A stretch of 64,000 nt of DNA, from IMG/VR virus record IMGVR_UViG_3300036760_000522, positions 124,001 through 188,000 of that record, one strand, 5' to 3'. Position 1 is the first letter of the stretch; each line of letters opens with the position of its first letter. The notes beneath the pieces are model-generated. The model saw only the letters and a list, made by a program, of their open reading frames with translations. It made no database searches and was not told the DNA's origin. The position numbers were made by a program, and so were the translations under genes. Of this stretch, positions 28,446 to 43,335 are shown piece by piece.

Positions 28446-28487
28446 ATCCCTAACGAGACAACAAGTGGACTAGGACAGACCGTCAAT

Positions 28488-28889
28488 CTAAACTGGAACA
28501 CCGACAGGCATTGATCGTCGTTCGTCCCCTAGAATTTCGTGACGCCATGATTTGGGGCGACGTCGTTCAGAGCGATTGTCGATGTAGGGAATGTAAGTAG
28601 ATCCTTCTGCTTTCAGTTGCCGAACAACTCCGCGAAGCGTTTCAACCGATTCCTGTATTTCGAGCGTTCCGTTACCTGCCCTGTAATGAAGTTTTTGAGG
28701 GGCAGTCGGACGCGATTTGACACGCGTCCTTCTCAGCCGACCTCGCAGCTTCTCATAGTGCACGTTCTCTAGGCGAGCGAGATCTGCCAGACTTTGCCAC
28801 CGCCCCATCCACGGCACCCAAAAAGTCGTTCGCTTCCGGTTGTTGAACCGTTCGTGTTGAGTCCACACACAATTATTGACGTGATATCC
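28488..28889 (-). pseudogene. 3' half of an HNH-type homing-endonuclease-like gene split by the transposon
   Basis: GYHVNNCVWTQHERFNNRKRT continues 37557-38033 in frame. Confidence 0.85.
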
Positions 28890-28898
28890 ACGACTCGG
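28890..28898. repeat. Left target-site duplication
   Basis: ACGACTCGG, identical to 37557-37565. Confidence 0.9.
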
Positions 28899-29023
28899 GG
28901 CTTTGCCTGAGAAAGGGCCGACCGACATGAGTTGTCGGGCAGTCTTGGGTTCTGCCGGGCAGCCGGTGTGCCACCTGAAAGAAAGGCCTCAGCATACGTC
29001 ACTAGGCCTTGAGCCGCGGGCGA

Positions 29024-29344
29024 CTATTCGCTGCGCGTCGTGGGGTGAGCCTGAATCCGGCCCTCCGCTACACACTCCTGTCGCCAGGCTTCATGTTGAC
29101 GATGCCTCCACTCAGTTTCTGCGATTCGTCGAGCCTCTTGCCCCTCTGGGGTTGCATGGAATCGCTCGGCTACGTGGTCCATCATTGCCTCATCGACCTT
29201 CTTGGTTCCCGTCTCCGCCCACTCGAACGCTCGTTGTATCCCGTCACAATCAAGTCCGGAACGAGCCAGCAGCAGTCCGACAAGGTGGCGGAGTTCCTTG
29301 ACCGTCTGAACGAGGTTGTCCGAGTGAATTGGGTCTAGTGTCAT
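29024..29344 (-). CDS. Hypothetical protein (transposon cargo)
   Basis: ATG at 29344 with a TTGACA-N18-CAGTTT promoter-like sequence just upstream. Confidence 0.55.
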   Translation of the reverse strand: MTLDPIHSDNLVQTVKELRHLVGLLLARSGLDCDGIQRAFEWAETGTKKVDEAMMDHVAERFHATPEGQEARRIAETEWRHRQHEAWRQECVAEGRIQAHPTTRSE

Positions 29345-29636
29345 TATCCAAACTGACCGCCACATCTGAAGCCTGTCAACCCGTGGACAGCCAACTGCGC
29401 CAGAGTGGAACAACCAATCCTGCGCTGAGATGCGTCTAGGGCCGCACAGGGTGTGTTGGCAGGCGTGGCACAGCGTGAGTCTGACGGAAGCTGTCACAGC
29501 GAACGAAGACCGGGATGGTGAGGAGAAATGCCCTTCTTCGTGACCGGGACACGCCCGCTCCACGACCAGTGCTCGTTCAAGAGCAGTTGGTACGTCCCAT
29601 CGCGCTTTTTGGAGAAAAGCGGGTAGTTGAGCAGGC

Positions 29637-30077
29637 TCAATCGACGAGATCTTGGTACCGATGCTTCCCGTTCTCCGCGAGAACCAAGATGAACCCGTGA
29701 CGCTTGGTCCAAAGTTTGTGTTCGATTAACGCTCGTGAGATGAGCGTGACCGTTGTGTTCTTCGCCGGATCGGAGGTCGGATCGACGGACTCGAGCTTAT
29801 CAAGTGAGACGATTCCGTAGTCATACGATGATGCGTCGTAGATAAAGTCCTCGGCGCTCTTGGTCACGAAAATCCGGCCCGGCAGAAGCTCGGACTTGAT
29901 CACGTCATCGGTCATTCCAGGCCGAGGAACGATAACTCGGATGTTCGCCGCTCGAAGAGGCACAGCGATGGTTTGCACATTTTCTTCGACAACGAGAACG
30001 CCCCGCGATGTCGCTTCGCGAGTTTGATCTTTGAAGCGATCCAAGATCCGATCGATGTCACCTTGTACGACGGTCAC
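29637..30077 (-). CDS. PIN-like (DUF5615/Mut7-C-type) putative RNase
   Basis: VLVVEENV...MTDDVI...GRIFVTKSAEDF pattern. Confidence 0.6.
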   Translation of the reverse strand: MTVVQGDIDRILDRFKDQTREATSRGVLVVEENVQTIAVPLRAANIRVIVPRPGMTDDVIKSELLPGRIFVTKSAEDFIYDASSYDYGIVSLDKLESVDPTSDPAKNTTVTLISRALIEHKLWTKRHGFILVLAENGKHRYQDLVD

Positions 30078-30135
30078 CTAGAAGCGATACCACGCGAAAC
30101 GGGAGGCAGCCGCTGATCATGCCCAAAAAGTGAGG

Positions 30136-33100
30136 TTACGCAGTCTCGCGACGGGGCGGAGGCCGCGTGGAGACTTTGACGATGTTGGGGCCGATGCTCC
30201 TCTCGCCTGTGGTTCGCGCAACGGCCTTCCACTGTCGATGCTTGCCGTTGAAGCTCACCGCCATGCCCAATGCCTCCAGTGTTTCCAATGCAGGGACAAC
30301 TGCGTCCGCCGAAGCGCCAATGTACAACGCAGCGACATCATTGGCTGTTAGGGCCTCGCTGCTAGCTACGATGAAATCTCGAATCGCCGCGACCTGCTGC
30401 GGCAACTCCATTGGCCACGGCAACTGAAGCTGGTGTTCTGGCGCCTCTGGCACACGCACAGCCCGAGGAACGGCCCCCTTTGCTTCTTGGAAAGCAGGTC
30501 GCAGCCAACGAACCGTTCCGGACGACTCCTCGGCGGTGCGCACTTGATTCAGAGTGAGTAGTTTCTCCAGAACGATGTCGTCAGAGAGCCCTCCTGACCA
30601 ACCATAGGCACTACATACGGCCTCATCGAGGTCTGAATGAAGCCTCTGTAGGCCCGAGACCAAGCCCTGGTCGTAGCTCAGTCTCTCTTTGTCCGTCAGC
30701 GGTTCACCAGACCGGAGCTTCTCGAGCACATTGTACATTGCAGTGATCGTTAGCTGCGGGTGTGCGGCCTGCTGGCGCCTGCGATGGCCATCAAGTTGTT
30801 CACCCAGATCGCGAATGCACTGTCGCTGTGTCTCCGTGGCGGACGGGAAAGGAAAAGTCTCAAAGCAGCGCGTCTTATTGTAGCGAGGCCGATCCTCGAG
30901 GGTTCCACCAGCGGCTAACGCCCACGCAACATGTATCCGACTGGATAGAACACCGAGTACATATGCGTCGTCGGCTGCTATGTTCACGAGCATGTTATCC
31001 GGAAGCACGGCTTCGTCGAGGAAAACGAACACTCGGTGCTTGGCTGTTTCGACCGTCGCAATGAAACGTGAGAGCCCAACAAGTGCGGGGCGAAAGGCAC
31101 TCCGAGGCTCGCCGTGTATCCACCAGTTGTCGCGGTAGACTGCTCGTCTATTTTGGTCTCTCTCCGGTTTGACCGTGTCGTGGATGTGTTGAAACACTTC
31201 CGGGAAGCGTTTTTGGACTTGCCCGAGGGTTAGGCCAAACAAGTCGATGACCCAGACTCCTCGAGGAGTCTGGGTCACGTCACGCCCATTTCGGTACTCG
31301 CGAATGTGCCGTTCGAGTCCTTCTTTTCGACCCAACCCGAGCTGTTCTGCTTTGTCCGGCCTGACGACAAATCCCGAGCCGTGGAGCTTAACACCAGGGC
31401 AGCTCAAGGCTTCATTGGAGCGAAGCGGAGCCGCACTCGAAACGTCTGCTCCGACTGAGAGATCGGCAGAGATAGTGCCGATGCGTGTGGCGAGTTCAAT
31501 AGTGGCACCGAGGCTCCCCTGGTTAGACTCGCATTGGACCGACAGCAGTCGACCAGCATGAATTCCGGCTTGGCCAACCGTCATGGAGATTCGTACCGCG
31601 GCACCATCCGCAGAGTCGACCCAAGGATGGTCTGGGATGGCGAAGACCAATGATAGTGGCTCCTTGTCGCTCAGGTGGGTTCTGACAACTCTGCGGTTGA
31701 AGGTCTGCCGCAGGCTGTTGGTAGCAATGAATCCGAATCGCCTTGCACGCCCTGCACGAACGAGTTCTGCGGCCTTGTGCCACCAGTACATCACGTAGTC
31801 ACACGACTCGGGAAGCTCCGGGTAAGCGTCGCGGATGGTTTCAGCATAGCCCTCCCCAAGTGTCCCGCGCATTCGTCCATTGCCCACGAATGGGGGGTTC
31901 CCTACGATGAAATCCGCGGCTGGCCAGTCAGCCCTCCTTGGGTTGATATACCGAACAACAGGCACCTGCGCCGTTTCATCTGGGACCTCGTCGCCGGTCA
32001 CATGGCTCTTCTTCATCGTCTCGCCGTCCCAAAAGGTCAGCAATGCGCCTGTGTGCTCATTGCGAGCTTCTTCTTCATGATCGTAAGCGAGCACCGCATC
32101 TCTGCATTCGATATTCTTGTCGTCCCTCAGGATTGGTTCTGGAGGTGTTTTTGACTGCCCGTACATCTTGTGATGCCATTGCAGGTAGCCGATCCACAGA
32201 ACCAGCTCGGCGATCTCCTTCGACCCACGACGGGCCTCGATACCTTTGAACTGTCGAGGCGTCACCATCATGTTTTCGCCCAGTTCCTGTTGCTTCATAC
32301 CCAGGTCGAAAAGCGTCGCCAGGACCTCGCTTTCCAAACGCTTGAAAAGGTTGAGCGCAACATAGAGAAAATTTGCAGATCCACAGGCCGGGTCGAGCAC
32401 GGTCGTGTTGCAGAGCTTCTCCAAAAATTCTCGAACAACGGACTGAGCTTCGTTTACTCTCTTTGGCGGCGAGAACTCGCCCGGTGGCACTAGCTGTCGA
32501 ACCCTGACTCGTACGATGTCCCATTCGGCGCGCAGTGGTTCCTCGATGGTCGGAACAAGCAAACGCTCTACGTACGAAGTCGGAGTAAAATGCGCGCCCA
32601 ACTTGTGACGCTCCTTCGGATCCAGGGCTCGCTCAATAAGCGTGCCAAAAATCGCTGGCTGCACGTCACACCACTCGCGCTTGGCTGCTTTGAGCAATAT
32701 TCTCAATTGCGTTGCCTCAAGGGGTAACGCCTCCGGATCCGCGAAAAGTCCACCATTGAACTGCAAGAGCTTTCCGAGAATGAAGAAGCTTTTCCCAGAA
32801 TTCATCGCGTCCCAAAGTGCCTCGACACCAGTCTTGAACGATGACGGATCCGGAATCCATGTTTTCTCCAAAGCGGTGGTGAACACCTTTTCTCGCAAAA
32901 GACCGATATCTTCGGCAAACATTGTGAAGACGCACCGCATCAGAAACCTCGCCACGACCTCGGACGAGTAACTGGTTTTTTCGAGTTCGCCAGCGAGGAC
33001 GGCAAGGTCGGTTGCAATTTCGCGAGTCACCTCCTCAGACTTGCGTGCCGGGTCGAGACTGCGAGGGTCAAGCCAGATCGCCCGCAAACAGTCAGAATGG

Positions 33101-33654
33101 TTTGCCAGGTCACTCAGGAAGATGCGGTTCTTCTGGTTATTCGGATAGGCGTGGTAGGCCCCACTGCCGTCAAAGCACGCGAACAGATCGAAACAGTACC
33201 CGATGTCGGTGACGATCACGAATGGGGGTGGCTGCGCCACGCCTTTCGTGTAGCGAAGAGCCTGACCTTGGGCAGCGTTCATTGCCGAACTCCAGCCTGG
33301 AGTTCCTCGTACTGCGGTTCCCTTCTTTTTACTGCCCTTGTTGGACCCCTGCTTGGCCTCCAACACGAAGCACCCCTGTTTGTACAGATCCATCAAGCCA
33401 GATTTTTGACCGTCGTGTTCGTGAATGACAGCGTCGGCTTCGAAGACGTAGACGTCCTGTTCTGGATCGCCCGTCTTTGCGTTGGGCTCCGGAACGCCGA
33501 GGGCTCTGCACAAATCTTTGCAGAAGCTATCCTTGTTTGCGCGTTCACTGCCCTCGCTGTGTTGCCAGCGGGCTATGAAGTCGTCGATTGGCACTAGTGT
33601 ATCGCTTTCGGCGATTGGTGGCCCACGCAGACGAACCAGTCCGTCAGACTGCAT
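30136..33654 (-). CDS. MmeI-like type IIL restriction-modification enzyme (endonuclease, m6A MTase and TRD)
   Basis: DLYKQGCFVLEAK, GAHFTP, LDPACGSANF, GNPPF, TAKHRVF, RPRYNKTRCFETFPFP. Confidence 0.92.
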   Translation of the reverse strand: MQSDGLVRLRGPPIAESDTLVPIDDFIARWQHSEGSERANKDSFCKDLCRALGVPEPNAKTGDPEQDVYVFEADAVIHEHDGQKSGLMDLYKQGCFVLEAKQGSNKGSKKKGTAVRGTPGWSSAMNAAQGQALRYTKGVAQPPPFVIVTDIGYCFDLFACFDGSGAYHAYPNNQKNRIFLSDLANHSDCLRAIWLDPRSLDPARKSEEVTREIATDLAVLAGELEKTSYSSEVVARFLMRCVFTMFAEDIGLLREKVFTTALEKTWIPDPSSFKTGVEALWDAMNSGKSFFILGKLLQFNGGLFADPEALPLEATQLRILLKAAKREWCDVQPAIFGTLIERALDPKERHKLGAHFTPTSYVERLLVPTIEEPLRAEWDIVRVRVRQLVPPGEFSPPKRVNEAQSVVREFLEKLCNTTVLDPACGSANFLYVALNLFKRLESEVLATLFDLGMKQQELGENMMVTPRQFKGIEARRGSKEIAELVLWIGYLQWHHKMYGQSKTPPEPILRDDKNIECRDAVLAYDHEEEARNEHTGALLTFWDGETMKKSHVTGDEVPDETAQVPVVRYINPRRADWPAADFIVGNPPFVGNGRMRGTLGEGYAETIRDAYPELPESCDYVMYWWHKAAELVRAGRARRFGFIATNSLRQTFNRRVVRTHLSDKEPLSLVFAIPDHPWVDSADGAAVRISMTVGQAGIHAGRLLSVQCESNQGSLGATIELATRIGTISADLSVGADVSSAAPLRSNEALSCPGVKLHGSGFVVRPDKAEQLGLGRKEGLERHIREYRNGRDVTQTPRGVWVIDLFGLTLGQVQKRFPEVFQHIHDTVKPERDQNRRAVYRDNWWIHGEPRSAFRPALVGLSRFIATVETAKHRVFVFLDEAVLPDNMLVNIAADDAYVLGVLSSRIHVAWALAAGGTLEDRPRYNKTRCFETFPFPSATETQRQCIRDLGEQLDGHRRRQQAAHPQLTITAMYNVLEKLRSGEPLTDKERLSYDQGLVSGLQRLHSDLDEAVCSAYGWSGGLSDDIVLEKLLTLNQVRTAEESSGTVRWLRPAFQEAKGAVPRAVRVPEAPEHQLQLPWPMELPQQVAAIRDFIVASSEALTANDVAALYIGASADAVVPALETLEALGMAVSFNGKHRQWKAVARTTGERSIGPNIVKVSTRPPPRRETA

Positions 33655-34069
33655 CTCATGGTGGTATTGTCCCCCTTGCCAGGCTGCGTTGTGCCGCTCG
33701 ACAGCACAACGGTCACTTGTTGTTGTTAATATCTCGCCTCAGTACGGATCATGGCCCACGGCGGTTTAGCCTTTTGGAATGAGTCGAAGAAGGTGAACGG
33801 AGCGTCAATGTCCTGACGGTCCGTGTCCTTTCGACAGACCATTGTCGTCGGTCACACCACGCGGGATTTAGAAATGGAATATTGCCGACGGCAGCGCACT
33901 CAGAGCCTCGTCGAGTTCGTCGCCGGATCCGTCAATCCCTGGTACCAATGGACTTTGTGAGAGCGTGGCGCGTGCTGCCACCGCATAGTTTGGCGGGTGC
34001 GAGAACAGGAGAGTCCGCTCAAACTTGCATGGTTCGAGCGAAGCACCGCTCCGGCACACTGCCGCCTCT

Positions 34070-34444
34070 TCAAACACGTTCAATGAGACAGAAGACGTCC
34101 CCGGAATCCAGCTCGCCTCTCCAATGGCGCAAAAGAACATCTCGGTTCTTAATGATGAACGGAACAACTTGCCTTTGGATTTTACCCGGCAACGTTCCAA
34201 GAATTCGCGACGGATTCGTGATCGTTACCGAGACGGAGGTATCGAGTCCTTCGGTCGTGGTCTCCTCACCAAGCACGACTTTGACCCTCGGACCGTGTTG
34301 AGAATCTGTTCCCCCGAATTCTCCAGGAGAGACCCAAATGGCGGCTCCCTGCACCCCAGTTCGTTTTGGGAGCAGGTTGGTCATGGCTTCCATGAGGATG
34401 CTCGGTTCTTCGAATCGCGAAGCAGTTCGTTGGAAATCACGCAT
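34070..34444 (-). CDS. DUF4160-like protein
   Basis: TNLLPKRTG..IWV...HGPRVKV...FIIKNRDVLLRHW. Confidence 0.65.
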   Translation of the reverse strand: MRDFQRTASRFEEPSILMEAMTNLLPKRTGVQGAAIWVSPGEFGGTDSQHGPRVKVVLGEETTTEGLDTSVSVTITNPSRILGTLPGKIQRQVVPFIIKNRDVLLRHWRGELDSGDVFCLIERV

Positions 34445-34568
34445 GAAGAAGTTTTGCACGACGGGAAGGAACTTTTGGTCTTCCGGCGTATCGTTTCCCG
34501 GCCGTACACGGCACGTCGCCGTTGAGCTACCGTGATCGACTGGGCAGTCTCTGCCCTCACGGCCTCAA

Positions 34569-34799
34569 TCAGAACAACAGCCGCTGCACCTCTTGCTCGA
34601 CTTCCGCCTCCGTCTTCATCGGTACCAACAAACAAACGTCCTGAATGGCCAGAGATACAGCCAACTGCCCTGCCTGATCGTATGGGCGTTCGAACATGCG
34701 GAGTCGAGCAGGAGCGATGTAGTCCCGATCCGTGAATTTTGTCCCCGACGCGGCCTTGCCGTAGGCTCGCACGTAGATGCTGTAGGTTTTGCCTTTCAT
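34569..34799 (-). CDS. Hypothetical protein
   Basis: ATGA overlap with the upstream gene. Confidence 0.6.
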   Translation of the reverse strand: MKGKTYSIYVRAYGKAASGTKFTDRDYIAPARLRMFERPYDQAGQLAVSLAIQDVCLLVPMKTEAEVEQEVQRLLF

Positions 34800-35050
34800 G
34801 AAGCGCGTTTCCTGCGATCGTGTCGTCCCTGCCGCAGACCTCGAGCTAGCGACACGGCACAAACTTGGTCGACCAGCTCGAACAGAAGCTCGTTCGTGAC
34901 CTCTTCGATGACCAAGTAGAGCTGAAACTGCGGGAGACTCACGGCTCGCCTGAGGCGCGCCTGGTGCCTCGTGAGCCTCTTCGCGAGCTGCTGAAGCTTC
35001 GGGCTCGTCGCGAGTAGGTGATCTGTGAGGTCGGGGGGTGCCTCGGACAT
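34796..35050 (-). CDS. Hypothetical protein
   Basis: Helical ORF divergent from the XRE gene. Confidence 0.6.
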   Translation of the reverse strand: MSEAPPDLTDHLLATSPKLQQLAKRLTRHQARLRRAVSLPQFQLYLVIEEVTNELLFELVDQVCAVSLARGLRQGRHDRRKRAS

Positions 35051-35088
35051 TTGGCTTCCCCGAGTTCACACCAGGTCGCCGTTCATTT

Positions 35089-35102
35089 CAACCTATAAGT
35101 TG
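35089..35102. promoter_or_regulatory. Palindromic operator candidate between divergent genes
   Basis: CAACCTATAAGTTG. Confidence 0.4.
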
Positions 35103-35109
35103 GTTTTAA

Positions 35110-35412
35110 TTGGGTCCTCGATACCGCGAGCCTGCGGGTGTGACGAAACAGAAGGCCGATGAACTAGGGCACAACGTTGGAAGGAGGGTCGCTGAAATAC
35201 GGCAGAAAAACGGCCTGACGCAGCAGGGGCTAGCGACCTCAGTTCGGGCGACCGTCCAGTGGATTAGCCGAATCGAGAATGGTGAGGAAAACCTGACCCT
35301 CGCGACGCTTGTGAAATTGGCCAACGCGTTGTCCGTGACGGTCAGGGAGCTGTTTGAGGAGCCAGCCTCCAATCCCAAGGAGGTTCGGCGCGGGAGACCA
35401 CGAAAGGGCTGA
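35110..35412 (+). CDS. XRE-family HTH regulator
   Basis: IRQKNGLTQQGLA...WISRIENGEENLTLATLVKLANAL; C-terminal RRGRPRK AT-hook. Confidence 0.93.
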   Translation: MGPRYREPAGVTKQKADELGHNVGRRVAEIRQKNGLTQQGLATSVRATVQWISRIENGEENLTLATLVKLANALSVTVRELFEEPASNPKEVRRGRPRKG

Positions 35413-35509
35413 CCCCCAGAGTTTTCTGGTGCACCTGAAGGGGCTCGTTCGAAGTCCGCTATTCCACTTCTGAAATCCGCCACAGAAGGTGGCCCCCCAG
35501 TGCTGACGA

Positions 35510-36025
35510 TTGGAGTTGTGCGGAATTTTGGAGGACACCCACGTTTCTGGCAGAACGGGAGTTGTGGCCGATCCACTTCCCGCAGAGGCAGTGCTCGAAC
35601 AGGCAGCCCGGCTCCTCAAGGTGGCCACGGATATTCTGTCCAATCTCAAGCCCCAAGGGGACGAGCAACGTGGAAAAACCGCGGGGCCGTTACAAATCGC
35701 GGGGCGACTGTACCTGAGCCTCACTGCAATCCTTGCCCTTTCAGCAACCGGATGGTCGTACCTCTTCAAAGGCACGGAAGGGGCAACATGTTCAACGGTG
35801 GTAGCTACACTGAGATGGTTGCTCGTGGCCGCAATCTTTCTAGGCATCACGGGGATTCTGTGGCTCGTAGCTCACCTGACACGCAAACACGTGTCACTGC
35901 TTTCTGGTCCCGGTGAATATTCATCCACGGTCCACGAGGCCTTGATGAGTAAGGGAGACCCGTTGGGGAGCGGCCCACCTGACTCTGTCACACAACTTCC
36001 GGGACCTGCTGGTACTTCGAAGTGA
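35510..36025 (+). CDS. Two-TM membrane protein
   Basis: Two hydrophobic helices; GTGA overlap with the next gene. Confidence 0.65.
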   Translation: MELCGILEDTHVSGRTGVVADPLPAEAVLEQAARLLKVATDILSNLKPQGDEQRGKTAGPLQIAGRLYLSLTAILALSATGWSYLFKGTEGATCSTVVATLRWLLVAAIFLGITGILWLVAHLTRKHVSLLSGPGEYSSTVHEALMSKGDPLGSGPPDSVTQLPGPAGTSK

Positions 36026-36303
36026 TCTACTTGGTCACATTGCAGCGAAGTCCCCCTAGAGTGATGCCGGGATTTACCGATCAATTGGCAGAGAGTTCTG
36101 AGTTTCATCGAAAGATCATGGACAACGTGTGGGTCGTCGACACTTGGTTCGGTAGTCGGGATCTCACAGAAGTACTTCGAGTGCATCTGGGTCCAGCTGA
36201 TCAGCTTTTGGTGATACGAGTACACGACGATTACTTCGGATGGATGCGTCAGGACGTATGGAAGTGGTTGCGAGCCGCTTCAAGCTATCGAAGATTCGAC
36301 TGA
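36022..36303 (+). CDS. Small ferredoxin-like (Cas2/VapD-like) protein
   Basis: MIYLVTL...KIMDNVWVVDT...LRVHLGPADQLLVI...GWM...WKWL. Confidence 0.6.
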   Translation: MIYLVTLQRSPPRVMPGFTDQLAESSEFHRKIMDNVWVVDTWFGSRDLTEVLRVHLGPADQLLVIRVHDDYFGWMRQDVWKWLRAASSYRRFD

Positions 36304-36558
36304 GCCATTGATTTGGTGAGGTCGGCGCCAATACAGTTTCGGGCGATCCTCCAATTGCTCACAACACCTTCTTTGGTGGCGCCGGCCGGGAAGGGAATGG
36401 GATGATCTTCGCAGAAGGCCCTGATCGATTAGACCGATCATCCTGTTCGTTCCCGTTCGCGACTTTGAGCAGATTCAAAACAGACGCCGAATACCGGACT
36501 ACCTTCGCGGCCCCTGGGTATCCTGGCTCCTGTTTCTTGGCTTACGGGAATCCGAAAA

Positions 36559-36885
36559 GTAGGGTGAGCCCGCCCGAGGTTTGATTACCGGGCGGGGACA
36601 CGCTTTCGACTAGGCGTGGCTCATGCCACCTACGGTCCGCCACCAACGAAGGTGCCGAATCAGCGGGCACATGAATCCCTCACGCAAGTGCTTGTAATGC
36701 ACAGCGTTTTCCTCTGCGGACATTCGTCGCCGCTGACGGGCCTTGACACGACTCCCACGCGGGCGTTAAAGTCCGCCTGCGTCAGGTGTTGGCTGGACTT
36801 TGAGCGCCCGTCAGGGCCGCTTTTGGGACGTGACACGGCCTATATGGCCCCAAAGACCCCGTGGTGCTTTAACACCTGGGGTTTT
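36559..36885. ncRNA. Candidate structured RNA or regulatory element
   Basis: Several nested stems, a TTGACA-N18-TAAAGT promoter-like sequence at 36743 and a terminator-like hairpin at 36856-36885. Confidence 0.4.
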
Positions 36886-36899
36886 CGGCTATTTGGAGA

Positions 36900-37442
36900 T
36901 CAGTTCATCATGGCGGCGGCCTCCGGCGGGACGGGAATCTTCGAGAGTTCTACGAGCTTGGCGACGTTGACCTTGTAGCGGTTACCACCGAGACTATCGA
37001 TAACGCGGAGCGTCTTTAGTCTCGTCAGCTGGGCGTTTACTCGGTTCTTTGCCACCATCTTTTTGAGACCGGAGCCCCAAATGGCTTCGGCGGTGCACTG
37101 GTAGTCCAGCTCGGGGTTCTCCAAGAGCCGGAACGCGATTCGCCAACAGATGGGTGTGCTCGGCGGCAGGACGTATTCCTGTTGGGGCCGTAACTGGGTC
37201 GAGCCGTTGAGCCCTGGTGTCGGTTGTGACGAACCGTTTGTGGCCTGGATTGGGGGACAATCATCATCACAGCGGCCGTGGGCGATGACTTCTTGTAGGT
37301 GGGCCTCTGTCTTGGTCTCGACTTCCTTGGCCTTGATCAAGGCTTTGGTCAGGTCGGCGACGTTCTTTTTCGCCACGTCGAGAGCGTGAACAGCGTCGAT
37401 TACAAGGTCGACGCCTTCGTTTCTATGGGAAGTCTTGGCCAA
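36900..37442 (-). CDS. Coiled-coil plus winged-HTH-like DNA-binding protein (element regulator candidate)
   Basis: N-terminal coiled coil; C-terminal RVNAQLTRLKTLRVIDSLGGNRY. Confidence 0.6.
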   Translation of the reverse strand: MAKTSHRNEGVDLVIDAVHALDVAKKNVADLTKALIKAKEVETKTEAHLQEVIAHGRCDDDCPPIQATNGSSQPTPGLNGSTQLRPQQEYVLPPSTPICWRIAFRLLENPELDYQCTAEAIWGSGLKKMVAKNRVNAQLTRLKTLRVIDSLGGNRYKVNVAKLVELSKIPVPPEAAAMMN

Positions 37443-37451
37443 GCCACCGCA

Positions 37452-37552
37452 GTCTACACAAGCGCAGGACCCTGTCTACACCGTCGTGTAAATCCAGACC
37501 GTTTTACCAGGCAGCTACACGATTTACCGGGCAGAGAGGTTTACACAGGCAA
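37452..37552. repeat. Subterminal repeats at the right end of the transposon
   Basis: TTTACCAGGCAG (37503), TTTACCGGGCAG (37523), TTTACACAGGCAA (37540); GTCTACAC at 37452 and 37474. Confidence 0.7.
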
Positions 37553-37556
37553 AGCC

Positions 37557-37565
37557 ACGACTCGG
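37557..37565. repeat. Right target-site duplication
   Basis: ACGACTCGG. Confidence 0.9.
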
Positions 37566-38033
37566 ATGTAAGCGTCCTAGCATCTTGCCAACCGGACAAG
37601 GTCCCATGTCCGCCAGGAATTCTTCGAACACTTGCCACCGAGGGTCTACTCGAACTCCTCGCTTCTCAGCAAAATAGCGCATGTGCGCCCAAGACTGGTA
37701 CGTGCTGTTTTGACAGCTCCCTCTACGGGCACAGCCGTGTCGTATGTGGCGTCCACGTCCACTGAAACGACAACCACAGCCCTTGCTGAGACCTGCACAC
37801 AAACTGTCAACTTGGACACCTCGCTGTATGCCACAAGCGCAGTGACATTTGACGTACAGTTTGCGGCCTCGCTTATACGGTGGCGACATCACGACCCAAT
37901 GGCCAAACGTCACGCCTCGTTTGATCGAGACCATCTTGGCCTCTGTTCCGATTATGACTTTTCTGCGCACCCTTCCTCCTTCAATTCCCAGTCCGATCTG
38001 ATCTCTACCCCAAATCAGCACTTTCATTTTCAA
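37557..38033 (-). pseudogene. 5' half of the HNH-type homing-endonuclease-like gene
   Basis: FGHWVV..CHCACG..SKGCGC..TYQSWAHM..RWQVFEEFLADMGPCP..LGRLHPSR. Confidence 0.85.
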
Positions 38034-38067: not shown

Positions 38068-40650
38068 ATGGTACACGACCGAAAAACCTGTATGTCCAGA
38101 TTTGGCACATTACTCGCGATCTTGCTTGTTGTCGCAGGTTGCGGAGAAAGCCTCTACGGACCTAAACAAATTGATATACCGGGCTCCGCCCCTATCCCGC
38201 CCGAACCCGAAACCCCCTCCATCACAGCGAGTTCGGGAGGCTCTCAAAGTGGAACGGATCCCACCGCACTTGAGCCAGACGCGGGTGCCGATAACCTAGG
38301 CGGTTCTGGTGGATCTGGTGGCAGCTCCTCTAGTGGCGGGACCGCAGGAGTGACTGGCGGCGGCGGAAATAGTGCAGCCGGTGCACCCAACACGACATTT
38401 TGCGACCCGGCCACTACACAGTGCAACGGTTCCGCATTTGAAACATGCCGCCAAGATGGCTCGGAATGGATCCCAACCGAAACTTGTCCGTTCGCCTGTG
38501 ACGACGAATTCGGGTGCATCGGCGAGTGCGTCCCCGAAGATGCCCGCTGTACGCTCAACTTAGGGGAACACGAGATCTGCGACGCCTTCGGTCAATGGTC
38601 GACTGAATCATGCCCCTTCGGCTGCGAAAACGGTGCGTGTACGGGCGTATGTGTGCCTGGGACCAACGCGTGTCTGCAAATTCCCGACCTGACCATGACC
38701 CTGATCACTGCCTTGTGTGACGGACAAGGGTCCTTTGTCCAGACCGACATTTGTGACTTCGTGTGCAAAGAGGAATCGGGCGTAGCCTACTGTACCGGGG
38801 AGTGCGTCCCCGGAACCAAGCGATGTGCCGGAGGGCCGGCCGTCGAGCTCTGCGACTCGGACGGCGAGTGGATCCCCGACGCCGACTGTGAATTCGCTTG
38901 CGAGGGTGACGGCGTCTGTGCCGGAACCTGTGAGCCAGGGACGATGCGTTGTTCTGGGCTCGGAATCGAATCCTGTGACACCCAGGGGGCTTGGCAACCT
39001 GCTACGACGACTTGCCCCTATGCCTGCCTGAACGGAGCTTGCACGGGCAACTGTGTGCCCGGAACCCTACGTTGCAACGGCTCTGCGACCGAGACTTGCG
39101 ACACCTTGGGAGAATGGGGATCGACCGTCTCGTGTCCGGTCGATCCTAACACGGCGCCAATCTGCTCAGGAGCCGGCATCTGTGGCACTGCCTGCACTTC
39201 TGGCTTCGCTGACTGCACAGCTGCTCCGGGATGTGAAACCACACTTGGGTCGTCGACCAACTGTGCCGCCTGTGACGACGCGTGCACGGCGACACCCGAG
39301 AACGCTGATCCAATTTGTGTCGGCGCCGTCGAGGGCTGTGGATTCACGTGCATCCAAGGTTTCGCCGACTGTACGGCCGACCCTGGATGTGAAACGAACA
39401 CCCAGAACGACGAAACGAACTGCGGCGTGTGTGGGCTCGCGTGCAACGGTGGCCAGTGTTTCAACGGCGCCTGCGAGTACCCGGGAATCGAACCAATTGC
39501 GGTCCATCCAGGAGGAAATAGCAGCGGGTGGGGTGACCGCATCGCTCAAGACGCGGACAACCTCTACACCTTCGAATACGACTACACCGAGAACCAAGTC
39601 ACTGTTCGAAAAATGCCCAAGAACGGGAGTGTGTCCGAAGTCATCACTAGCTTTGAATACTCGCCCCAAGCCGAGATCAGCATTGGAGTCGCTGATATGT
39701 TGTCAGCCGGACAACATTTGTACATCATCAAGCAGACGTACGTCGCATTTGTCGGCATCACGTCATCCGAGATCATTCGCTGTCCGACAACAACGCCTAA
39801 TCCGCTCGACTGCACACAAGTTTATAGCGGGACGGGGAGTTCACACCAACGCCTTGTGAAAAACTCGACACACGTCTATTGGCACAACGAGGACCAGGAA
39901 GGACCGTGCCTTGTGAATGGCAATGGGTGTGATCCGACGGGCTACCCGTTTAGGTCCGTAACGTTCTACCGCACATTGATCGATTCAGCATCGCCGTCAA
40001 ACGAACTTGTCTACTCCCTCTCAGGAACCTGGTTCGTGGAGCCAAAAATCGTCGTCGATGACGATTTCATTTACTACTGGCACGTCGAGAGAGGCACAGT
40101 AGCTCTCAATCAATATGTCTATCAAGCGTACCTGACGAAGCACTCGCTAGCTGAGCCAACGACAGCGCCCGAGAATGATATTGGATTGGCGGCTTTCGCC
40201 ACCTACATCAACGAGAATGGTTTCCTTGTCGAGGGCCGACCTCTGCACTACCCAGTCGATTTGATCAAGATGGAGTCGGGTCAGATCATTGCAACCTCCG
40301 ACAACAAATACTTCATCTTCGGTGCCTACCCCGAGGACACGACAGCCGAGCTGCTACACGTCGTGCAGTCCGTACAAAGCATCGTACCTACCGACGAATA
40401 CCTGTTCAACAAAGACGACCGAATCTACACACCCACTCAATGGCTGGATGTGAGAAACTTCACACGCGGCTACTGGACAACGTATCCGCACCAAGCTTAT
40501 GCGATCATGTCCGACGTTGCCGACGACGACTACGTGTACTTCCTGAGCTGGGGCTACTGGAACGAGTACCAATATCAGATAGATGGTCCTGACGTGGTGA
40601 CCCCTCAGACGCTTTATCGTGCCCCAGTGACTACGTACCAGGTGTTCTAG
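38068..40650 (+). CDS. Large Cys-rich repeat lipoprotein with C-terminal beta-propeller-like domain (myxobacterial type)
   Basis: LLVVAGC lipobox, Gly/Ser linker, repeated C.G.C.PG..RC.G...E.C...G.W and GFADC...GCET motifs. Confidence 0.85.
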   Translation: MVHDRKTCMSRFGTLLAILLVVAGCGESLYGPKQIDIPGSAPIPPEPETPSITASSGGSQSGTDPTALEPDAGADNLGGSGGSGGSSSSGGTAGVTGGGGNSAAGAPNTTFCDPATTQCNGSAFETCRQDGSEWIPTETCPFACDDEFGCIGECVPEDARCTLNLGEHEICDAFGQWSTESCPFGCENGACTGVCVPGTNACLQIPDLTMTLITALCDGQGSFVQTDICDFVCKEESGVAYCTGECVPGTKRCAGGPAVELCDSDGEWIPDADCEFACEGDGVCAGTCEPGTMRCSGLGIESCDTQGAWQPATTTCPYACLNGACTGNCVPGTLRCNGSATETCDTLGEWGSTVSCPVDPNTAPICSGAGICGTACTSGFADCTAAPGCETTLGSSTNCAACDDACTATPENADPICVGAVEGCGFTCIQGFADCTADPGCETNTQNDETNCGVCGLACNGGQCFNGACEYPGIEPIAVHPGGNSSGWGDRIAQDADNLYTFEYDYTENQVTVRKMPKNGSVSEVITSFEYSPQAEISIGVADMLSAGQHLYIIKQTYVAFVGITSSEIIRCPTTTPNPLDCTQVYSGTGSSHQRLVKNSTHVYWHNEDQEGPCLVNGNGCDPTGYPFRSVTFYRTLIDSASPSNELVYSLSGTWFVEPKIVVDDDFIYYWHVERGTVALNQYVYQAYLTKHSLAEPTTAPENDIGLAAFATYINENGFLVEGRPLHYPVDLIKMESGQIIATSDNKYFIFGAYPEDTTAELLHVVQSVQSIVPTDEYLFNKDDRIYTPTQWLDVRNFTRGYWTTYPHQAYAIMSDVADDDYVYFLSWGYWNEYQYQIDGPDVVTPQTLYRAPVTTYQVF

Positions 40651-40909: not shown

Positions 40910-41265
40910 TGTCTGACATCGAAACCAGGATCATTTCGTGGAGGGACTTCATGTCAGGTCTTTCTGACATCGTTCCACCCTATCCTTGCCCCATATTCTG
41001 TCCATCTTGCAAAGCAAGACACCTCGACATAGGGCCCTGGTTGACACGACTACACAAGAAACACCTGTGTCTCGAATGCGAAAAGATATTCGTCACCTCG
41101 AACACACACCCAACCGTAGGCGTCAGCAACGAGTTTCTACAAAGCAAGCATCTGACAAAGCCGGAAATCATCGCCAGGCGCACTATGGGAATCAAACCGT
41201 ACCTCGTATTGGAAGACGAACGCCTCGCTTGGCTAGCTGTAGCCAAGACACTCACTGGGGACTGA
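40906..41265 (+). CDS. Hypothetical Zn-ribbon protein
   Basis: CPSC..H...H..HLCLEC. Confidence 0.7.
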   Translation: MMSDIETRIISWRDFMSGLSDIVPPYPCPIFCPSCKARHLDIGPWLTRLHKKHLCLECEKIFVTSNTHPTVGVSNEFLQSKHLTKPEIIARRTMGIKPYLVLEDERLAWLAVAKTLTGD

Positions 41266-41270
41266 TCAAA

Positions 41271-41909
41271 ATGTTCGTCCCCATGATTTCAGTCTTCCGA
41301 CCCACCGTCAGTGGGCACATAGAAATCAAGCACGAGGAGGTCGAAGAAACCCACTACATCGACACGCCTGACGGTAAAGGAACGGAAGTCAAATTCCCTA
41401 AGACACGTTGTTGTCGTCTCTATCGTACAGCAATCTTGCTGCCCAAGTTGCTCGCACAAGATTCACCTGCTGAGCAACTTGCAAACCGTCAAGTTGTGTC
41501 GGAAGCCTTTGGTGACGTGCTCATCGCAGGACTCGGAATCGGTATGACTACGGTCGCGATCCTACAAAGACCAATGGTACGCACGGTCACCGTCGTCGAG
41601 TCCGACGCTGAAGTCCTACGTGTTGTCGGAGACGTTCTCAAAAAGTTGCCCGACGCCCAGCGGAAACTCGGCTTCGTTCACGCAGACATCACTGAATGGA
41701 AACCGTACAAACGAAAATGGAGTACGATTTGGTTCGACATCTGGTCATCCGTCGATGAAGGGACAATTCCAACGATCAACTTCCTACACAAGAAGTACCA
41801 AAAGCACAAGCGCCCCGACGGTTACATGGGTTCGTATAAACAACAGTTTTTGCGCAACACTAGGAAAGATCAACGATCACCCCAGAAGGACTGGAGTGAT
41901 CTAGGCTAA
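41271..41909 (+). CDS. Spermidine-synthase-like SAM-dependent methyltransferase
   Basis: GDVLIAGLGIG, VTVVESD, HADI, IWFDIW. Confidence 0.8.
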   Translation: MFVPMISVFRPTVSGHIEIKHEEVEETHYIDTPDGKGTEVKFPKTRCCRLYRTAILLPKLLAQDSPAEQLANRQVVSEAFGDVLIAGLGIGMTTVAILQRPMVRTVTVVESDAEVLRVVGDVLKKLPDAQRKLGFVHADITEWKPYKRKWSTIWFDIWSSVDEGTIPTINFLHKKYQKHKRPDGYMGSYKQQFLRNTRKDQRSPQKDWSDLG

Positions 41910-42432: not shown

Positions 42433-43335
42433 ATGACGACACTTCACGAGATTGGCAGAGCCAAGATTTACCTAGTTGACGACAGCCTGAATTGGCTCGC
42501 CACCCAGAAAGAAAACAGCTTTCAAGCAGTAGTTACTGATCCGCCTTACGGCGCCAACGAGTTCGCGACAAAAGAGCTTGAACATCTACGTAACGACAAC
42601 AAGGGTATATGGGGGACACCTCCTAAAGGACGTAGTCCTTTACCAAGATTCACCATACTGGATGACAGCGACATCGATTCGATGTCGCTGTTTTTCACAC
42701 AATTAGCAAAACAACTCCACCGAGTTCTTGTACCAGGAGCTCACGTCTTCATCGCTACGAACGTGCTGCTATCACAATACGTCTATATTGCGTTTCTGCA
42801 AAACGGCTTCAAGAAACGAGGGGAAGTAGTCCGGCTAGTCCAGACGCTTCGTGGTGGAGATCGTCCGAAAAATGCCGAAGACGAGTTTCCAGACATAACT
42901 GTCATGGCGAGATCCGCATGGGAGCCGTGGGGGATATTCCGCAAACCTTGTGAAGGCCGTGTCCAAGACAATCTGAAGAGGTGGAGAACAGGCGGTCTAC
43001 AAAGAGAAAGCGTGAGTCGACCTTTCACTGACGTCATCAAAAGTGCATTGCCCTCGGATGCGGAAAGAGCAATCTCACAACACCCTACTCTAAAACCTCA
43101 ACGGTTCATGAGACAAATTGTCAGAGCAGCTTTACCGCTTGGGGGAACGGTCATAGACCCATTCATGGGGTCTGGGTCCGTGGTCGCGGCTGCCTTACAC
43201 TTGGATTGTGACGTTGTTGGGCTCGAACGCGATCATGTTTTCTTCGAAGAGGCGAAAACTTCGATACCAAAATTTGTCGAAATCAACGATGACTTGTCGA
43301 ATCGTCGGGACTTCGACGCATTGATGGAGCTTTAG
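42433..43335 (+). CDS. Orphan N4-C/N6-A DNA methyltransferase (beta class)
   Basis: VTDPPY precedes HPTLKP and DPFMGSGS. Confidence 0.92.
   Translation: MTTLHEIGRAKIYLVDDSLNWLATQKENSFQAVVTDPPYGANEFATKELEHLRNDNKGIWGTPPKGRSPLPRFTILDDSDIDSMSLFFTQLAKQLHRVLVPGAHVFIATNVLLSQYVYIAFLQNGFKKRGEVVRLVQTLRGGDRPKNAEDEFPDITVMARSAWEPWGIFRKPCEGRVQDNLKRWRTGGLQRESVSRPFTDVIKSALPSDAERAISQHPTLKPQRFMRQIVRAALPLGGTVIDPFMGSGSVVAAALHLDCDVVGLERDHVFFEEAKTSIPKFVEINDDLSNRRDFDALMEL

What the first reader, a model, noticed from the sequence alone, without database searches (positions are those of the whole stretch)
28890..37565. 8.66-kb transposase-less cargo transposon with TIRs and a 9-bp TSD splitting a phage gene in frame
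Seen: ACGACTCGG is duplicated at 28890-28898 and 37557-37565. Directly inside are the inverted ends GGCTTTGCCTG and CAGGCAAAGCC. Removing the element and one TSD joins 38033-37557 to 28889-28488 into one 292-aa ORF (…GKMLGRLHPSR|GYHVNNCVW…NNRKRT), matching the LDR.DN..GY.P.NC.W HNH-type motif. The ends are therefore exact and the insertion looks recent. None of the ~10 internal ORFs resembles a DDE, HUH, tyrosine or serine recombinase. Known: GGC-initiated TIRs with 9-bp TSDs typify the IS903 group of IS5 (GGCTTTGTTG…), and GG ends with 8-9-bp TSDs also occur in IS256/Mutator-like elements. Inference: this is a large non-autonomous mobile insertion cassette, mobilised in trans, that moved a defence-like gene block into a jumbo phage.
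Basis: partly seen in the sequence, partly recalled or inferred. Interest (0 to 1): 0.88.

Follow-up and report, generated by a model that had tools for sequence, protein, structure and literature searches.

The report
Transposase-less restriction-gene transposon in jumbo phage
An 8.7-kb mobile DNA cassette carrying a restriction-modification enzyme, but no transposase of its own, has inserted cleanly into a dispensable-looking gene of a roughly 300-kb phage. It belongs to a widespread, apparently unnamed branch of the IS5/IS903 transposons that routinely carries cargo genes and also occurs in other contigs predicted to be viral.

Summary
Positions 28899-37556 form an 8,658-bp element with perfect 11-nt inverted ends (GGCTTTGCCTG) and a perfect 9-bp target duplication. 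Removing it restores a 292-aa HNH-like ORF.

Two independent empty-site alleles exist in related phages, one on an IMG/VR contig and one in another sediment run. Both run through the exact predicted junction.

The ends are not orphan. The same terminus, 9-bp duplications and a fixed subterminal repeat layout (motif at positions 38 and 58 on one end, 24 and 44 on the other) recur in about 20 complete elements. These come from bacteria, archaea (86-97-bp MITEs) and viral contigs.

Autonomous members (3.3-8.8 kb) encode a ~410-aa transposase with a SWIM zinc finger and an IS5-type DDE domain, followed by a ~100-aa helper. Its nearest annotated relatives are IS903-type insertion sequences.

The window's copy lacks both of these genes. 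It keeps a conserved end-proximal winged-helix gene. Its cargo is an intact-looking MmeI-family restriction-modification enzyme and a three-gene module (HTH regulator, membrane protein, 93-aa protein).

Verdict: a non-autonomous cargo member of an IS903-related family. It was either mobilised in trans or lost its transposase after insertion. I rate it a new variant of a known kind, of moderate interest.

The parts
28488..28898 (-). C-terminal part of the disrupted HNH-like phage gene. The left TSD copy at 28890-28898 is included.
   Evidence: PHROG phrog_3377, HNH endonuclease, 3.7e-7. Continuous with the N-terminal part once the element is removed. Intact homologue in L004.
28890..28898 (.). 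Left copy of the 9-bp target-site duplication ACGACTCGG.
   Evidence: Present as a single copy at the empty sites.
28899..28962 (+). 'L-type' end: terminal GGCTTTGCCTG plus two subterminal CGGGCA repeats at element positions 38-43 and 58-63 (28936-28941 and 28956-28961).
   Evidence: The same 38/58 layout occurs in 22 of 23 unique ends from other genomes.
29024..29563 (-). 179-aa ORF, probably not a gene.
   Evidence: Negative codon score. No family hit and no homologue in related loci.
29637..30077 (-). 146-aa cargo gene downstream of the RM gene. There is a weak lead to DUF5615/PIN-like proteins.
   Evidence: Best codon score in the element. Homologue in L051 at 28% identity, 1e-15. Atlas feature scores of 0.72-0.79 are a lead only.
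30136..33654 (-). 1172-aa MmeI-family type IIG/IIL restriction-modification enzyme combining nuclease, methyltransferase and target-recognition domains.
   Evidence: Pfam MmeI_N, MmeI_hel, MmeI_Mtase and MmeI_TRD. PADLOC REase_MTase_IIG at 1423 bits over the full length. PDB 5HR4 MmeI at 1e-40, with D-x9-E-x-K and GNPPF aligned.
34070..34459 (-). 129-aa cargo gene, possibly a DUF4160/DhiT-like toxin-type protein.
   Evidence: Positive codon score. NCBIfam toxin_DhiT at E 0.014. Atlas scores 0.90-0.93 to clusters that include DUF4160. Lead only.
35110..35412 (+). 100-aa XRE-type HTH regulator, the first gene of a three-gene module.
   Evidence: Pfam HTH_3 at 3e-12. PADLOC control-protein models. 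Homologues next to the same partners in L005 and L007.
35510..36025 (+). 171-aa protein with two hydrophobic helices (read by eye), the second gene of the module.
   Evidence: 70% identical to L007 and 47% to L005, in the same gene order. No family hit.
36022..36303 (+). 93-aa protein, the third gene of the module.
   Evidence: 69% identical to P0121 in L007 and 48% to L005.
36900..37442 (-). 180-aa end-proximal accessory gene of the transposon family: a long helix plus a winged-helix domain. It is the only transposition-module gene retained.
   Evidence: Homologues sit in the same place, just inside the R-type end and upstream of the transposase, in L047 and L085/L087. 56 representative relatives. 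AlphaFold pLDDT 86.6. Foldseek top hits are all winged-helix DNA binders, none significant.
37493..37556 (-). 'R-type' end: terminal GGCTTTGCCTG (37546-37556, read inward) with TGCCYG repeats at element positions 24-29 and 44-49 (37528-37533 and 37508-37513).
   Evidence: The same 6/24/44 layout occurs in L040 and L047 and in L085.
37557..37565 (.). Right copy of the 9-bp target-site duplication ACGACTCGG.
37557..38033 (-). N-terminal part of the disrupted HNH-like phage gene.
   Evidence: PHROG phrog_374, HNH endonuclease, 3e-15. 81% identical to the intact L004 gene.

Best explanation
Positions 28899-37556 are a non-autonomous, transposase-less member of a family of cargo-carrying DDE transposons related to the IS903 group of the IS5 family. 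In autonomous members, a ~410-aa transposase (N-terminal SWIM zinc finger plus IS5-type DDE domain with the Y-2-R-3-E-6-K signature) acts on ends that begin GGCTTTGC. A ~100-aa HTH/zinc-ribbon protein immediately follows the transposase gene. In one subfamily a winged-helix protein is also encoded just inside one end. The ends carry direct copies of the terminal motif at fixed helical spacing. Insertion makes staggered cuts 9 bp apart, which produces the 9-bp duplication. The window's copy has both specialised ends and the winged-helix gene but has lost the transposase and its partner. I infer that a related transposase, supplied by the host chromosome or another co-resident element, moved it into the replicating phage genome. 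It landed in an HNH-endonuclease-like gene. It brought an apparently intact MmeI-type restriction-modification enzyme, an HTH/membrane/93-aa module and two small toxin-like genes. Shown: the boundaries, the duplication, the empty sites, family membership of both ends, the absence of the transposase, and the cargo identities. Inferred: trans-mobilisation, the roles of the accessory proteins, activity of the RM enzyme, and any benefit to the phage.
For: The boundaries are exact, and two empty-site alleles exist. An L-end pattern scan of genomes and metagenomes returned many true ends with the motif at exactly positions 38 and 58 (22 of 23 unique ends). These include two archaeal MITEs with perfect 9-bp TSDs. 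An unbiased search around transposase genes, for any 8-nt TIR plus an exact 9-bp TSD, recovered only GGCTTTGC-ended elements. About 20 distinct complete copies were found. The transposase has SWIM plus DDE_Tnp_1 domains. Its best NCBIfam model is transpos_IS5_2, and D, D, E and YREK are invariant in a 9-sequence alignment. Its nearest annotated relatives include a 1055-bp IS903-type IS. The R-end layout and the o180 gene match the autonomous elements L047 and L085. The partner gene F3 follows the transposase in 9 loci. The window element contains no transposase, F3 or NikA-like remnant. Two different transposase-motif scans of viral contigs did not return the window's own contig. The closest MmeI relative (61% identity) sits in an element with the same terminus and the same three-gene module. 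The C-terminus of F3 lies at that contig's edge, which suggests an autonomous relative with the same cargo.
Against: No transposition was observed. No second insertion of this very element was found: the exact ends occur only in its own contig, and only the runs that hold the phage hold the element. The donor and the trans-acting transposase are unidentified, and only 64 kb of the 301-kb phage could be read directly. The transposase scores below NCBIfam's IS5_2 cut-off (125.6 against 140), so placement within IS5 is by best match, not by curated membership. The subterminal repeats have the same absolute orientation at both ends, and I cannot explain this mechanistically.
Confidence: 0.85

Rival explanations
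1. The element entered the phage as an autonomous transposon, using its own transposase. It then lost the transposase/F3 segment by deletion inside the phage, so no trans-mobilisation occurred.
For: The relative L005 appears to carry the same cargo (MmeI plus the three-gene module) together with F3, and therefore probably the transposase. In the window, a roughly 600-bp stretch without a convincing gene lies between o180 and the 93-aa gene, exactly where the transposase sits in L047 and L085.
Against: No remnant of the transposase, F3 or the NikA-like gene is detectable even at E<=50. TSD, TIR and target ORF are all still perfect, which argues for little time since insertion. All three runs that hold the phage hold identical pieces of the same version. 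None of this is decisive.
Confidence: 0.12
2. The element is autonomous. One of its uncharacterised small proteins (o180, o146, o129 or the 171/93-aa pair), or the MmeI-like enzyme itself, is a cryptic transposase.
For: Several ORFs have no family assignment. o180 is conserved next to the end.
Against: In every autonomous relative, the same ends co-occur with a canonical DDE transposase. o180 models as a helix plus a winged helix with no catalytic fold, and it occurs together with the DDE gene rather than instead of it. The three-gene module also occurs in an element with different termini (L007). MITEs of 86-97 bp with the same ends show that the ends alone suffice in cis.
Confidence: 0.02
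3. This is not a transposition product. It is a site-specific integration, a homing or recombination event, or an assembly chimera.
For: None specific. The target is an HNH-like gene, and such genes can be associated with homing.
Against: Perfect TIR plus a 9-bp TSD is the signature of DDE transposition, and the same signature recurs at unrelated targets for about 20 relatives. No integrase is present. The source run has one contig of uniform depth 45 across the junction, and two other runs hold identical pieces of both flank and element.
Confidence: 0.01

Closest known systems
IS903 (IS5 family, IS903 group)
   Same: The termini begin GGCTTTG and the target duplication is 9 bp. The DDE_Tnp_1 catalytic domain carries the IS4/IS5 YREK signature. 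An IS903-type copy (1055 bp, IR GGCTTTGTTGAATAAATC, TSD ATACAGACG) is among the nearest annotated relatives of the family transposase.
   Different: Only about 25-28% identity, and only over the catalytic part. The family transposase has an extra N-terminal SWIM zinc finger and a conserved downstream partner gene. In one subfamily there is also an upstream winged-helix gene. The two ends differ and carry spaced subterminal repeats. All complete autonomous copies are 3.3-8.8 kb and carry passenger genes. The window copy has no transposase at all.
Mobile insertion cassettes (MICs, for example MIC231 of Bacillus cereus and the qnrS2 mic)
   Same: IS-type inverted ends flank passenger genes 'instead of the transposase gene' (the wording of PMC4444841). 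A target duplication is present and a cognate autonomous element exists. Trans-mobilisation by the cognate transposase is the accepted mechanism (my knowledge of De Palmenaer et al. 2004, cited within PMC4444841).
   Different: Different IS family. At 8.7 kb with about 9 genes it is much larger than described MICs, which carry one or a few genes (my knowledge). It retains one accessory transposition-module gene, and it resides in a phage genome.
Transporter IS (tIS) as defined by ISfinder
   Same: The autonomous relatives are IS-like units with a single transposase plus passenger genes inside the inverted repeats.
   Different: In this family cargo is the rule rather than the exception, in every complete autonomous copy examined here. 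The window copy is the transposase-less derivative. The comparison with tIS rests on my knowledge of the ISfinder definition and was not tested.
MmeI (type IIL/IIG restriction-modification enzyme, PDB 5HR4)
   Same: All four MmeI Pfam domains occur in order. The nuclease D-x9-E-x-K motif and the methyltransferase NPPF motif are conserved.
   Different: Distant from MmeI itself (E 1e-40, partial alignment). It is about 250 residues longer and belongs to a clade found mostly in Myxococcota and Acidobacteriota MAGs, with at most 61% identity to anything public. Its recognition site is unknown.
Tn7-, Mu- and Tn552-type transposons with multiple transposase-binding sites in unlike ends
   Same: The left and right ends are functionally differentiated, with repeated subterminal motifs about two helical turns apart.
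   Different: No TnsB/MuA-type transposase or ATPase is present. The TSD is 9 bp, not 5 bp. The ends start GGC, not TG. The catalytic domain is IS5-type. This is a resemblance of end architecture only.

Membership tests
IS5 family, IS903 group | Encodes a DDE_Tnp_1 transposase with D, D, E and the Y-2-R-3-E-6-K signature. | tested here: not met
   The window element has no transposase or remnant. Autonomous relatives with the same ends do have one, but they score 125.6 bits against NCBIfam IS5_2's cut-off of 140.
IS5 family, IS903 group | Inverted ends starting GGC (IS903: GGCTTTGTTG...). | tested here: met
   GGCTTTGCCTG at both ends. An IS903-type reference read from L082 has GGCTTTGTTGAATAAATC.
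IS5 family, IS903 group | 9-bp target-site duplication. | tested here: met
   ACGACTCGG occurs twice. Perfect 9-bp TSDs flank about 20 relatives and the IS903-type copy in L082.
IS5 family, IS903 group | Compact IS of about 1 kb with a single ORF and no passenger genes (feature taken from my knowledge of ISfinder). | tested here: not met
   The window element is 8,658 bp with about 9 genes. Autonomous relatives are 3.3-8.8 kb with accessory and cargo genes.
Mobile insertion cassette (non-autonomous IS derivative) | IS-type inverted repeats and a TSD flank passenger genes, with no transposase inside. | tested here: met
Mobile insertion cassette (non-autonomous IS derivative) | A cognate autonomous element with the same ends exists. 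| tested here: met
   L040, L047 and L085 share the 11-nt terminus and both the L-type and R-type subterminal layouts, and they encode the transposase.
Mobile insertion cassette (non-autonomous IS derivative) | Mobilised in trans by the cognate transposase. | not testable with these tools
   This needs a transposition assay. No second insertion of the same cassette was found.
MmeI-family type IIL/IIG RM enzyme (cargo gene) | Single polypeptide with an N-terminal PD-ExK nuclease, helical spacer, gamma-class N6-adenine methyltransferase and TRD. | tested here: met
   Pfam MmeI_N, MmeI_hel, MmeI_Mtase and MmeI_TRD are all above cut-off. PADLOC full-length match at 1423 bits. The motifs align to 5HR4.
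MmeI-family type IIL/IIG RM enzyme (cargo gene) | Cleaves at a fixed distance from an asymmetric site and methylates one strand. | not testable with these tools
   Biochemistry or methylome sequencing is required.
Composite (compound) transposon | Two complete IS copies bracket the cargo. | tested here: not met
   Only 11-16 nt of inverted identity at the ends, and no IS copies.
Tn7-like / Mu-like transposons | TnsB/MuA-type transposase, AAA+ regulator, TG...CA ends and a 5-bp TSD. | tested here: not met
   None of these proteins is present. The ends start GGC and the TSD is 9 bp.

The most novel reading that the evidence does not exclude
The GGCTTTGC-ended, SWIM-DDE elements are an undescribed cross-domain lineage of IS903-related cargo transposons. 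They occur in bacteria, in archaea as MITEs, and in about 30 IMG/VR viral contigs, including contigs of 451 and 618 kb. They have differentiated ends and dedicated accessory DNA-binding proteins. They act as a recurrent vehicle that delivers restriction-modification and other conflict genes into phage genomes. The window shows that even an 8.7-kb copy without a transposase, one that keeps the end-proximal winged-helix gene, can still be moved.
Probability: 0.4. Interest if true: 0.7.

Novelty: new variant of a known kind. Interest (0 to 1): 0.55.

Why it matters
Insertion sequences are considered rare in phage genomes, and how phages pick up defence or exclusion systems is an open practical question. 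This case is cleanly resolved. The empty sites, both specialised ends and autonomous relatives are all in hand. It shows a transposon family, not a recombination hotspot or a homing endonuclease, placing a complete type IIL restriction-modification enzyme into a large phage.

The family itself appears uncatalogued beyond the generic label 'transposase', although at least 1,972 protein clusters belong to it. It has unusual features for an IS5 relative: a SWIM domain, conserved helper genes, unlike ends with phased repeats that co-vary with the terminal motif, and obligatory cargo. RM systems are repeatedly among that cargo.

The family also offers a simple experimental system. Defined ends of about 64 bp and natural MITEs of 86-97 bp could be used to study how end asymmetry and accessory proteins work in an IS5-type transposase.

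Tried and rejected
- **Exact ends in viral contigs.** 25-27-nt ends were found only in the window's own contig. No second insertion of this exact element is visible there.
- **Element-only run search.** It found only the three runs that also hold the phage, so no donor was identified.
- **Near-identical MmeI copies.** None exist; the best match is 61% identical. A word-based search with the 93-aa protein returned a single hit.
- **tblastn for lost genes.** Searches of the element with the family transposase, F3 and the NikA-like protein, up to E 10-50, found nothing.
- **False positives in the L-end scan.** About 15 of the 26 genome hits lie in what reads as a conserved GTPase (SelB-like) coding sequence (...MTIDLGFAW...VPGH..., judged by eye, not tested). 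They were discarded. L014, L019, L037 and L041 were also set aside as doubtful.
- **Is o180 universal?** An iterative search over all fetched loci found it only in the window and L047. It is specific to one subfamily.
- **Foldseek of the o180 model against the PDB.** No significant match, best E 0.23.
- **Literature searches.** Searches for SWIM with IS5 transposases, and for transposons with passenger genes in jumbo phages, found nothing relevant. This is weak evidence of novelty only. ISfinder could not be queried.
- **Are the other viral contigs related phages?** Their flanks show no similarity to the window's 64 kb. PHROG hits on their flanks are only partly phage-like, so some may be prophage or host DNA.
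- **Rejected hypotheses.** A Tn7/Mu-type element, a composite transposon, an integrase-mediated island and an IS256/Mutator-type element were all rejected.

Full report
**1. The observation**

ACGACTCGG occurs at 28890-28898 and 37557-37565. GGCTTTGCCTG follows at 28899-28909, and its reverse complement ends at 37556. The ends match at 11 of 11 positions, then at 14 of 16.

A 9-bp direct repeat abutting an 11-nt inverted repeat within 20 kb is expected about 0.001 times in a window of this size. Exactly one is present. Deleting 28899-37565 joins 38033-37557 to 28889-28488 on the minus strand. The result is an 879-nt ORF of 292 codons without stops. Both halves hit PHROG families annotated as HNH endonuclease.

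**2. Independent proof of the boundaries**

The window is part of IMGVR_UViG_3300036760_000522, a 301,550-bp contig. By the range of L003, the window corresponds to contig positions 124,001-188,000. Its flanks encode a family A DNA polymerase, an intein-containing DnaB helicase and an SNF2 helicase, all with phage-family matches.

A related viral contig (L004, IMGVR_UViG_3300037424_001177, 159 kb) carries the same gene uninterrupted. That gene is 250 aa and 81% identical over the N-terminal part. It sits next to the same 845/860-aa cysteine-rich lipoprotein gene, and the DNA runs straight through a single copy of the target.

Public sediment runs tell the same story. The source run has one contig of even depth 45 across the junction. 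Two further runs hold identical pieces of both phage flank and element. In a fourth run, a related phage (90-95% identical) has a contig that follows the left flank to 28898. It then continues with the sequence found at 37566 onward, with one mismatch in 30 letters. The insertion is therefore real, precise and polymorphic among related phages.

**3. What is inside**

- **30136-33654 (minus strand).** A 1172-aa MmeI-family type IIG/IIL restriction-modification enzyme. All four MmeI Pfam domains are present. It gives a full-length PADLOC match of 1423 bits and matches PDB 5HR4. The nuclease D-x9-E-x-K motif and the methyltransferase GNPPF motif are conserved. Its closest public relative is only 61% identical, and the next relatives are mostly from Polyangia, Myxococcota and Thermoanaerobaculia MAGs.
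- **35110-36303 (plus strand).** A three-gene module: an XRE-type HTH regulator, a 171-aa protein with two hydrophobic helices, and a 93-aa protein. The module is conserved as a unit in two other loci.
- **Two small genes with weak leads.** One points to DUF5615/PIN-like proteins and the other to DUF4160/DhiT-like proteins.
- **No recombinase.** No DDE, HUH, tyrosine or serine recombinase is detected by Pfam, NCBIfam or PADLOC.

**4. The ends belong to a large family**

The contig carrying the closest MmeI relative (L005) has the identical 11-nt terminus. L005 stops exactly 30 nt outside that terminus, and L006, from another sample, starts exactly at it. This is what k=31 assembly graphs do at the edge of a polymorphic or multi-copy element; the reading is my inference.

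L005 and the window's left end also share CGGGCA-type motifs at element positions 38 and 58. I scanned with a pattern built from the terminus and these two motifs, with slack in the spacers. It found true ends in the following:

- Roseomonas, Thermoanaerobaculia, Gemmatimonadaceae, Polyangiaceae, Myxococcales and Acidobacteriota;
- a Thermoplasmatales archaeon and two Woesearchaeota;
- another viral contig and about a dozen metagenome contigs.

About 15 hits in a conserved GTPase coding sequence were discarded. Despite the slack allowed, 22 of 23 unique ends have the motifs at exactly 38 and 58. The two Woesearchaeota copies are 86-bp and 97-bp MITEs with perfect 9-bp duplications.

**5. The family's transposase**

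Inside several of these ends lies a ~410-aa protein with a SWIM zinc finger and a DDE_Tnp_1 domain.

- Its best NCBIfam model is transpos_IS5_2, at 125.6 bits against a cut-off of 140.
- A nine-sequence alignment has invariant CxC...CxH, D, D and E residues and the Y-2-R-3-E-6-K signature.
- Its nearest annotated relatives (25-28% identity) are IS5-family transposases. One lies in a 1055-bp IS with the classical IS903 inverted repeat and a 9-bp duplication.
- At least 1,972 protein clusters belong to the family, named at most 'transposase'.

Searching viral contigs with the transposase found about 30 loci. An unbiased scan around these genes, for any 8-nt inverted repeat plus an exact 9-bp direct repeat, recovered only elements that begin GGCTTTGC. 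Counting redundant loci once, there are about 20 complete elements with perfect 9-bp duplications. The autonomous ones are 3.3-8.8 kb, so all carry extra genes. Cargo identified includes:

- a BglII-like endonuclease with an N6/N4 methyltransferase (L049);
- methyltransferases (L053, L085);
- HipA_2 with DUF3037 (L013);
- the HTH/membrane/92-aa module (L007).

**6. Module organisation and what the window copy has lost**

In L085, a complete 4,347-bp element with TSD CACCTGTCG, the order is:

1. R-type end;
2. a homologue of the window's 180-aa gene;
3. a small NikA-like gene;
4. the transposase;
5. a ~100-aa HTH/zinc-ribbon gene (F3);
6. a methyltransferase;
7. L-type end.

L047 has the same R-end layout and the same 180-aa homologue in the same place. 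F3 follows the transposase in nine loci.

The window's R end has TGCCYG at positions 6, 24 and 44, like L040, L047 and L085. Its 180-aa gene sits just inside that end. The transposase, F3 and the NikA-like gene are absent, with no remnant.

The 180-aa protein has 56 representative relatives. It models confidently as a long helix plus a winged helix. Structural neighbours are winged-helix DNA binders, but none is significant. I infer that it binds DNA, possibly the subterminal repeats. This is untested.

Across subfamilies the terminal octamer (positions 5-12) is repeated at about positions 23-30 and changes in step: TGCCYG, TGCCCAA, TGCACAA, TGCAACG. This covariation argues that one DNA-binding domain reads both the terminal and the subterminal copies.

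**7. Mechanism**

The most likely history has four steps.

1. An autonomous ancestor resembling L005 carried MmeI plus the three-gene module. L005 has the C-terminus of F3 at its contig edge.
2. That ancestor lost the transposase/F3 segment.
3. A related transposase, supplied in trans, recognised the two intact ends of the resulting cassette.
4. The cassette was inserted into the phage genome during infection, with 9-bp staggered cuts.

Two different transposase-motif scans of the viral collection did not return the window's own contig. The helper was therefore probably host-encoded, although I could not read the rest of the phage.

The main rival is that the deletion happened after an autonomous insertion. 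The data do not exclude it. The perfect duplication, the perfect ends and the still-open target reading frame indicate a recent event either way.

Two things remain unknown: whether the RM enzyme is active, and whether it benefits the phage, for example by excluding competitors.

**8. Comparison with known kinds, and verdict**

The element works like a mobile insertion cassette, that is, IS ends around cargo with no transposase (PMC4444841). It meets the structural criteria for one. It shares with IS903 the GGCTTTG terminus, the 9-bp duplication and the type of catalytic domain.

It and its autonomous relatives fail the compact, single-ORF definition of an IS903-group IS. They add a SWIM domain, helper genes, unlike ends and obligatory cargo. 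The phased subterminal repeats recall Tn7 or Mu ends, but no other feature of those families is present.

I found no description of this lineage in the searchable literature. ISfinder could not be consulted, so 'undescribed' is provisional.

It is a new variant of a known kind, of moderate interest (0.55).

Noticed in passing
window 20903-23662 (-): The phage DnaB-like helicase is interrupted by an intein with a LAGLIDADG homing-endonuclease domain (Pfam Intein_splicing, LAGLIDADG_3, DnaB_C). This is a second, unrelated selfish element about 6 kb from the transposon.
   Followed up: no
window 38068-40650 (+), 40986-41909 (+), 42433-43335 (+): Next to the insertion lies an 860-aa cysteine-rich predicted lipoprotein with no family hit; it is conserved in the empty-site phage L004. 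Beyond it are two DNA methyltransferase-like genes, one with a weak RrnaAD hit and one N6_N4_Mtase. The phage therefore already modifies DNA near the place where the RM cassette landed.
   Followed up: no
L022:2502-2598 and L024:2919-3004: Two Woesearchaeota MAG contigs carry 97-bp and 86-bp miniature elements with the same termini, the 38/58 motifs and perfect 9-bp duplications. The family's ends are therefore present in Archaea.
   Followed up: partly
L007:1034-9783: An 8,750-bp autonomous relative (TSD TCGCGAACC, termini GGCTTTGTC) carries the same HTH/membrane/92-aa module at about 70% identity but no MmeI gene. It also carries a metallophosphatase and a DnaG-type zinc-ribbon gene. The three-gene module travels independently of the RM gene, and its function is unknown.
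   Followed up: partly
L040:6460-7607: In this otherwise complete 4,886-bp element, the transposase gene is split by about 1.15 kb containing a 376-aa ORF. This may be a nested insertion. It was not examined.
   Followed up: no
L005:1-41 and L006:1-11: Two Logan contigs from different samples end exactly 30 nt outside the element terminus (L005) or exactly at it (L006). This fits de Bruijn graph branch points at a polymorphic or multi-copy element boundary. The reading is my inference from k=31 assembly behaviour.
   Followed up: partly
window L end 28899-28962 and R end 37493-37556: All four subterminal repeats have the same absolute orientation along the element (CRGGCA on the plus strand at both ends), while only the terminal 11 nt are inverted. 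I have no mechanistic explanation for this asymmetry.
   Followed up: partly
window 28446-28732, compared with run X4: The empty-site relative in run X4 differs in the C-terminal part of the HNH-like gene by an 81-nt deletion. A 43-nt stretch is also replaced by 346 other letters. The L004 homologue is likewise shorter, at 250 against 292 aa. The target gene is variable and probably dispensable.
   Followed up: no
L049:11657-12844 (-): A second, unrelated transposase (phrog_506, 5e-77) lies about 4 kb from the RM-carrying element in this viral contig.
   Followed up: no
Genome-contig loci L009, L011, L012, L016, L017, L020, L021, L023, L026, L027, L030-L034: The end pattern also matches what reads as a conserved GTPase (SelB-like) coding sequence...MTIDLGFAW...VPGH..., in Chloroflexota and other phyla. 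The SelB-like label is my reading by eye. This is a coincidence of coding sequence and is worth knowing for anyone who reuses the pattern.
   Followed up: yes
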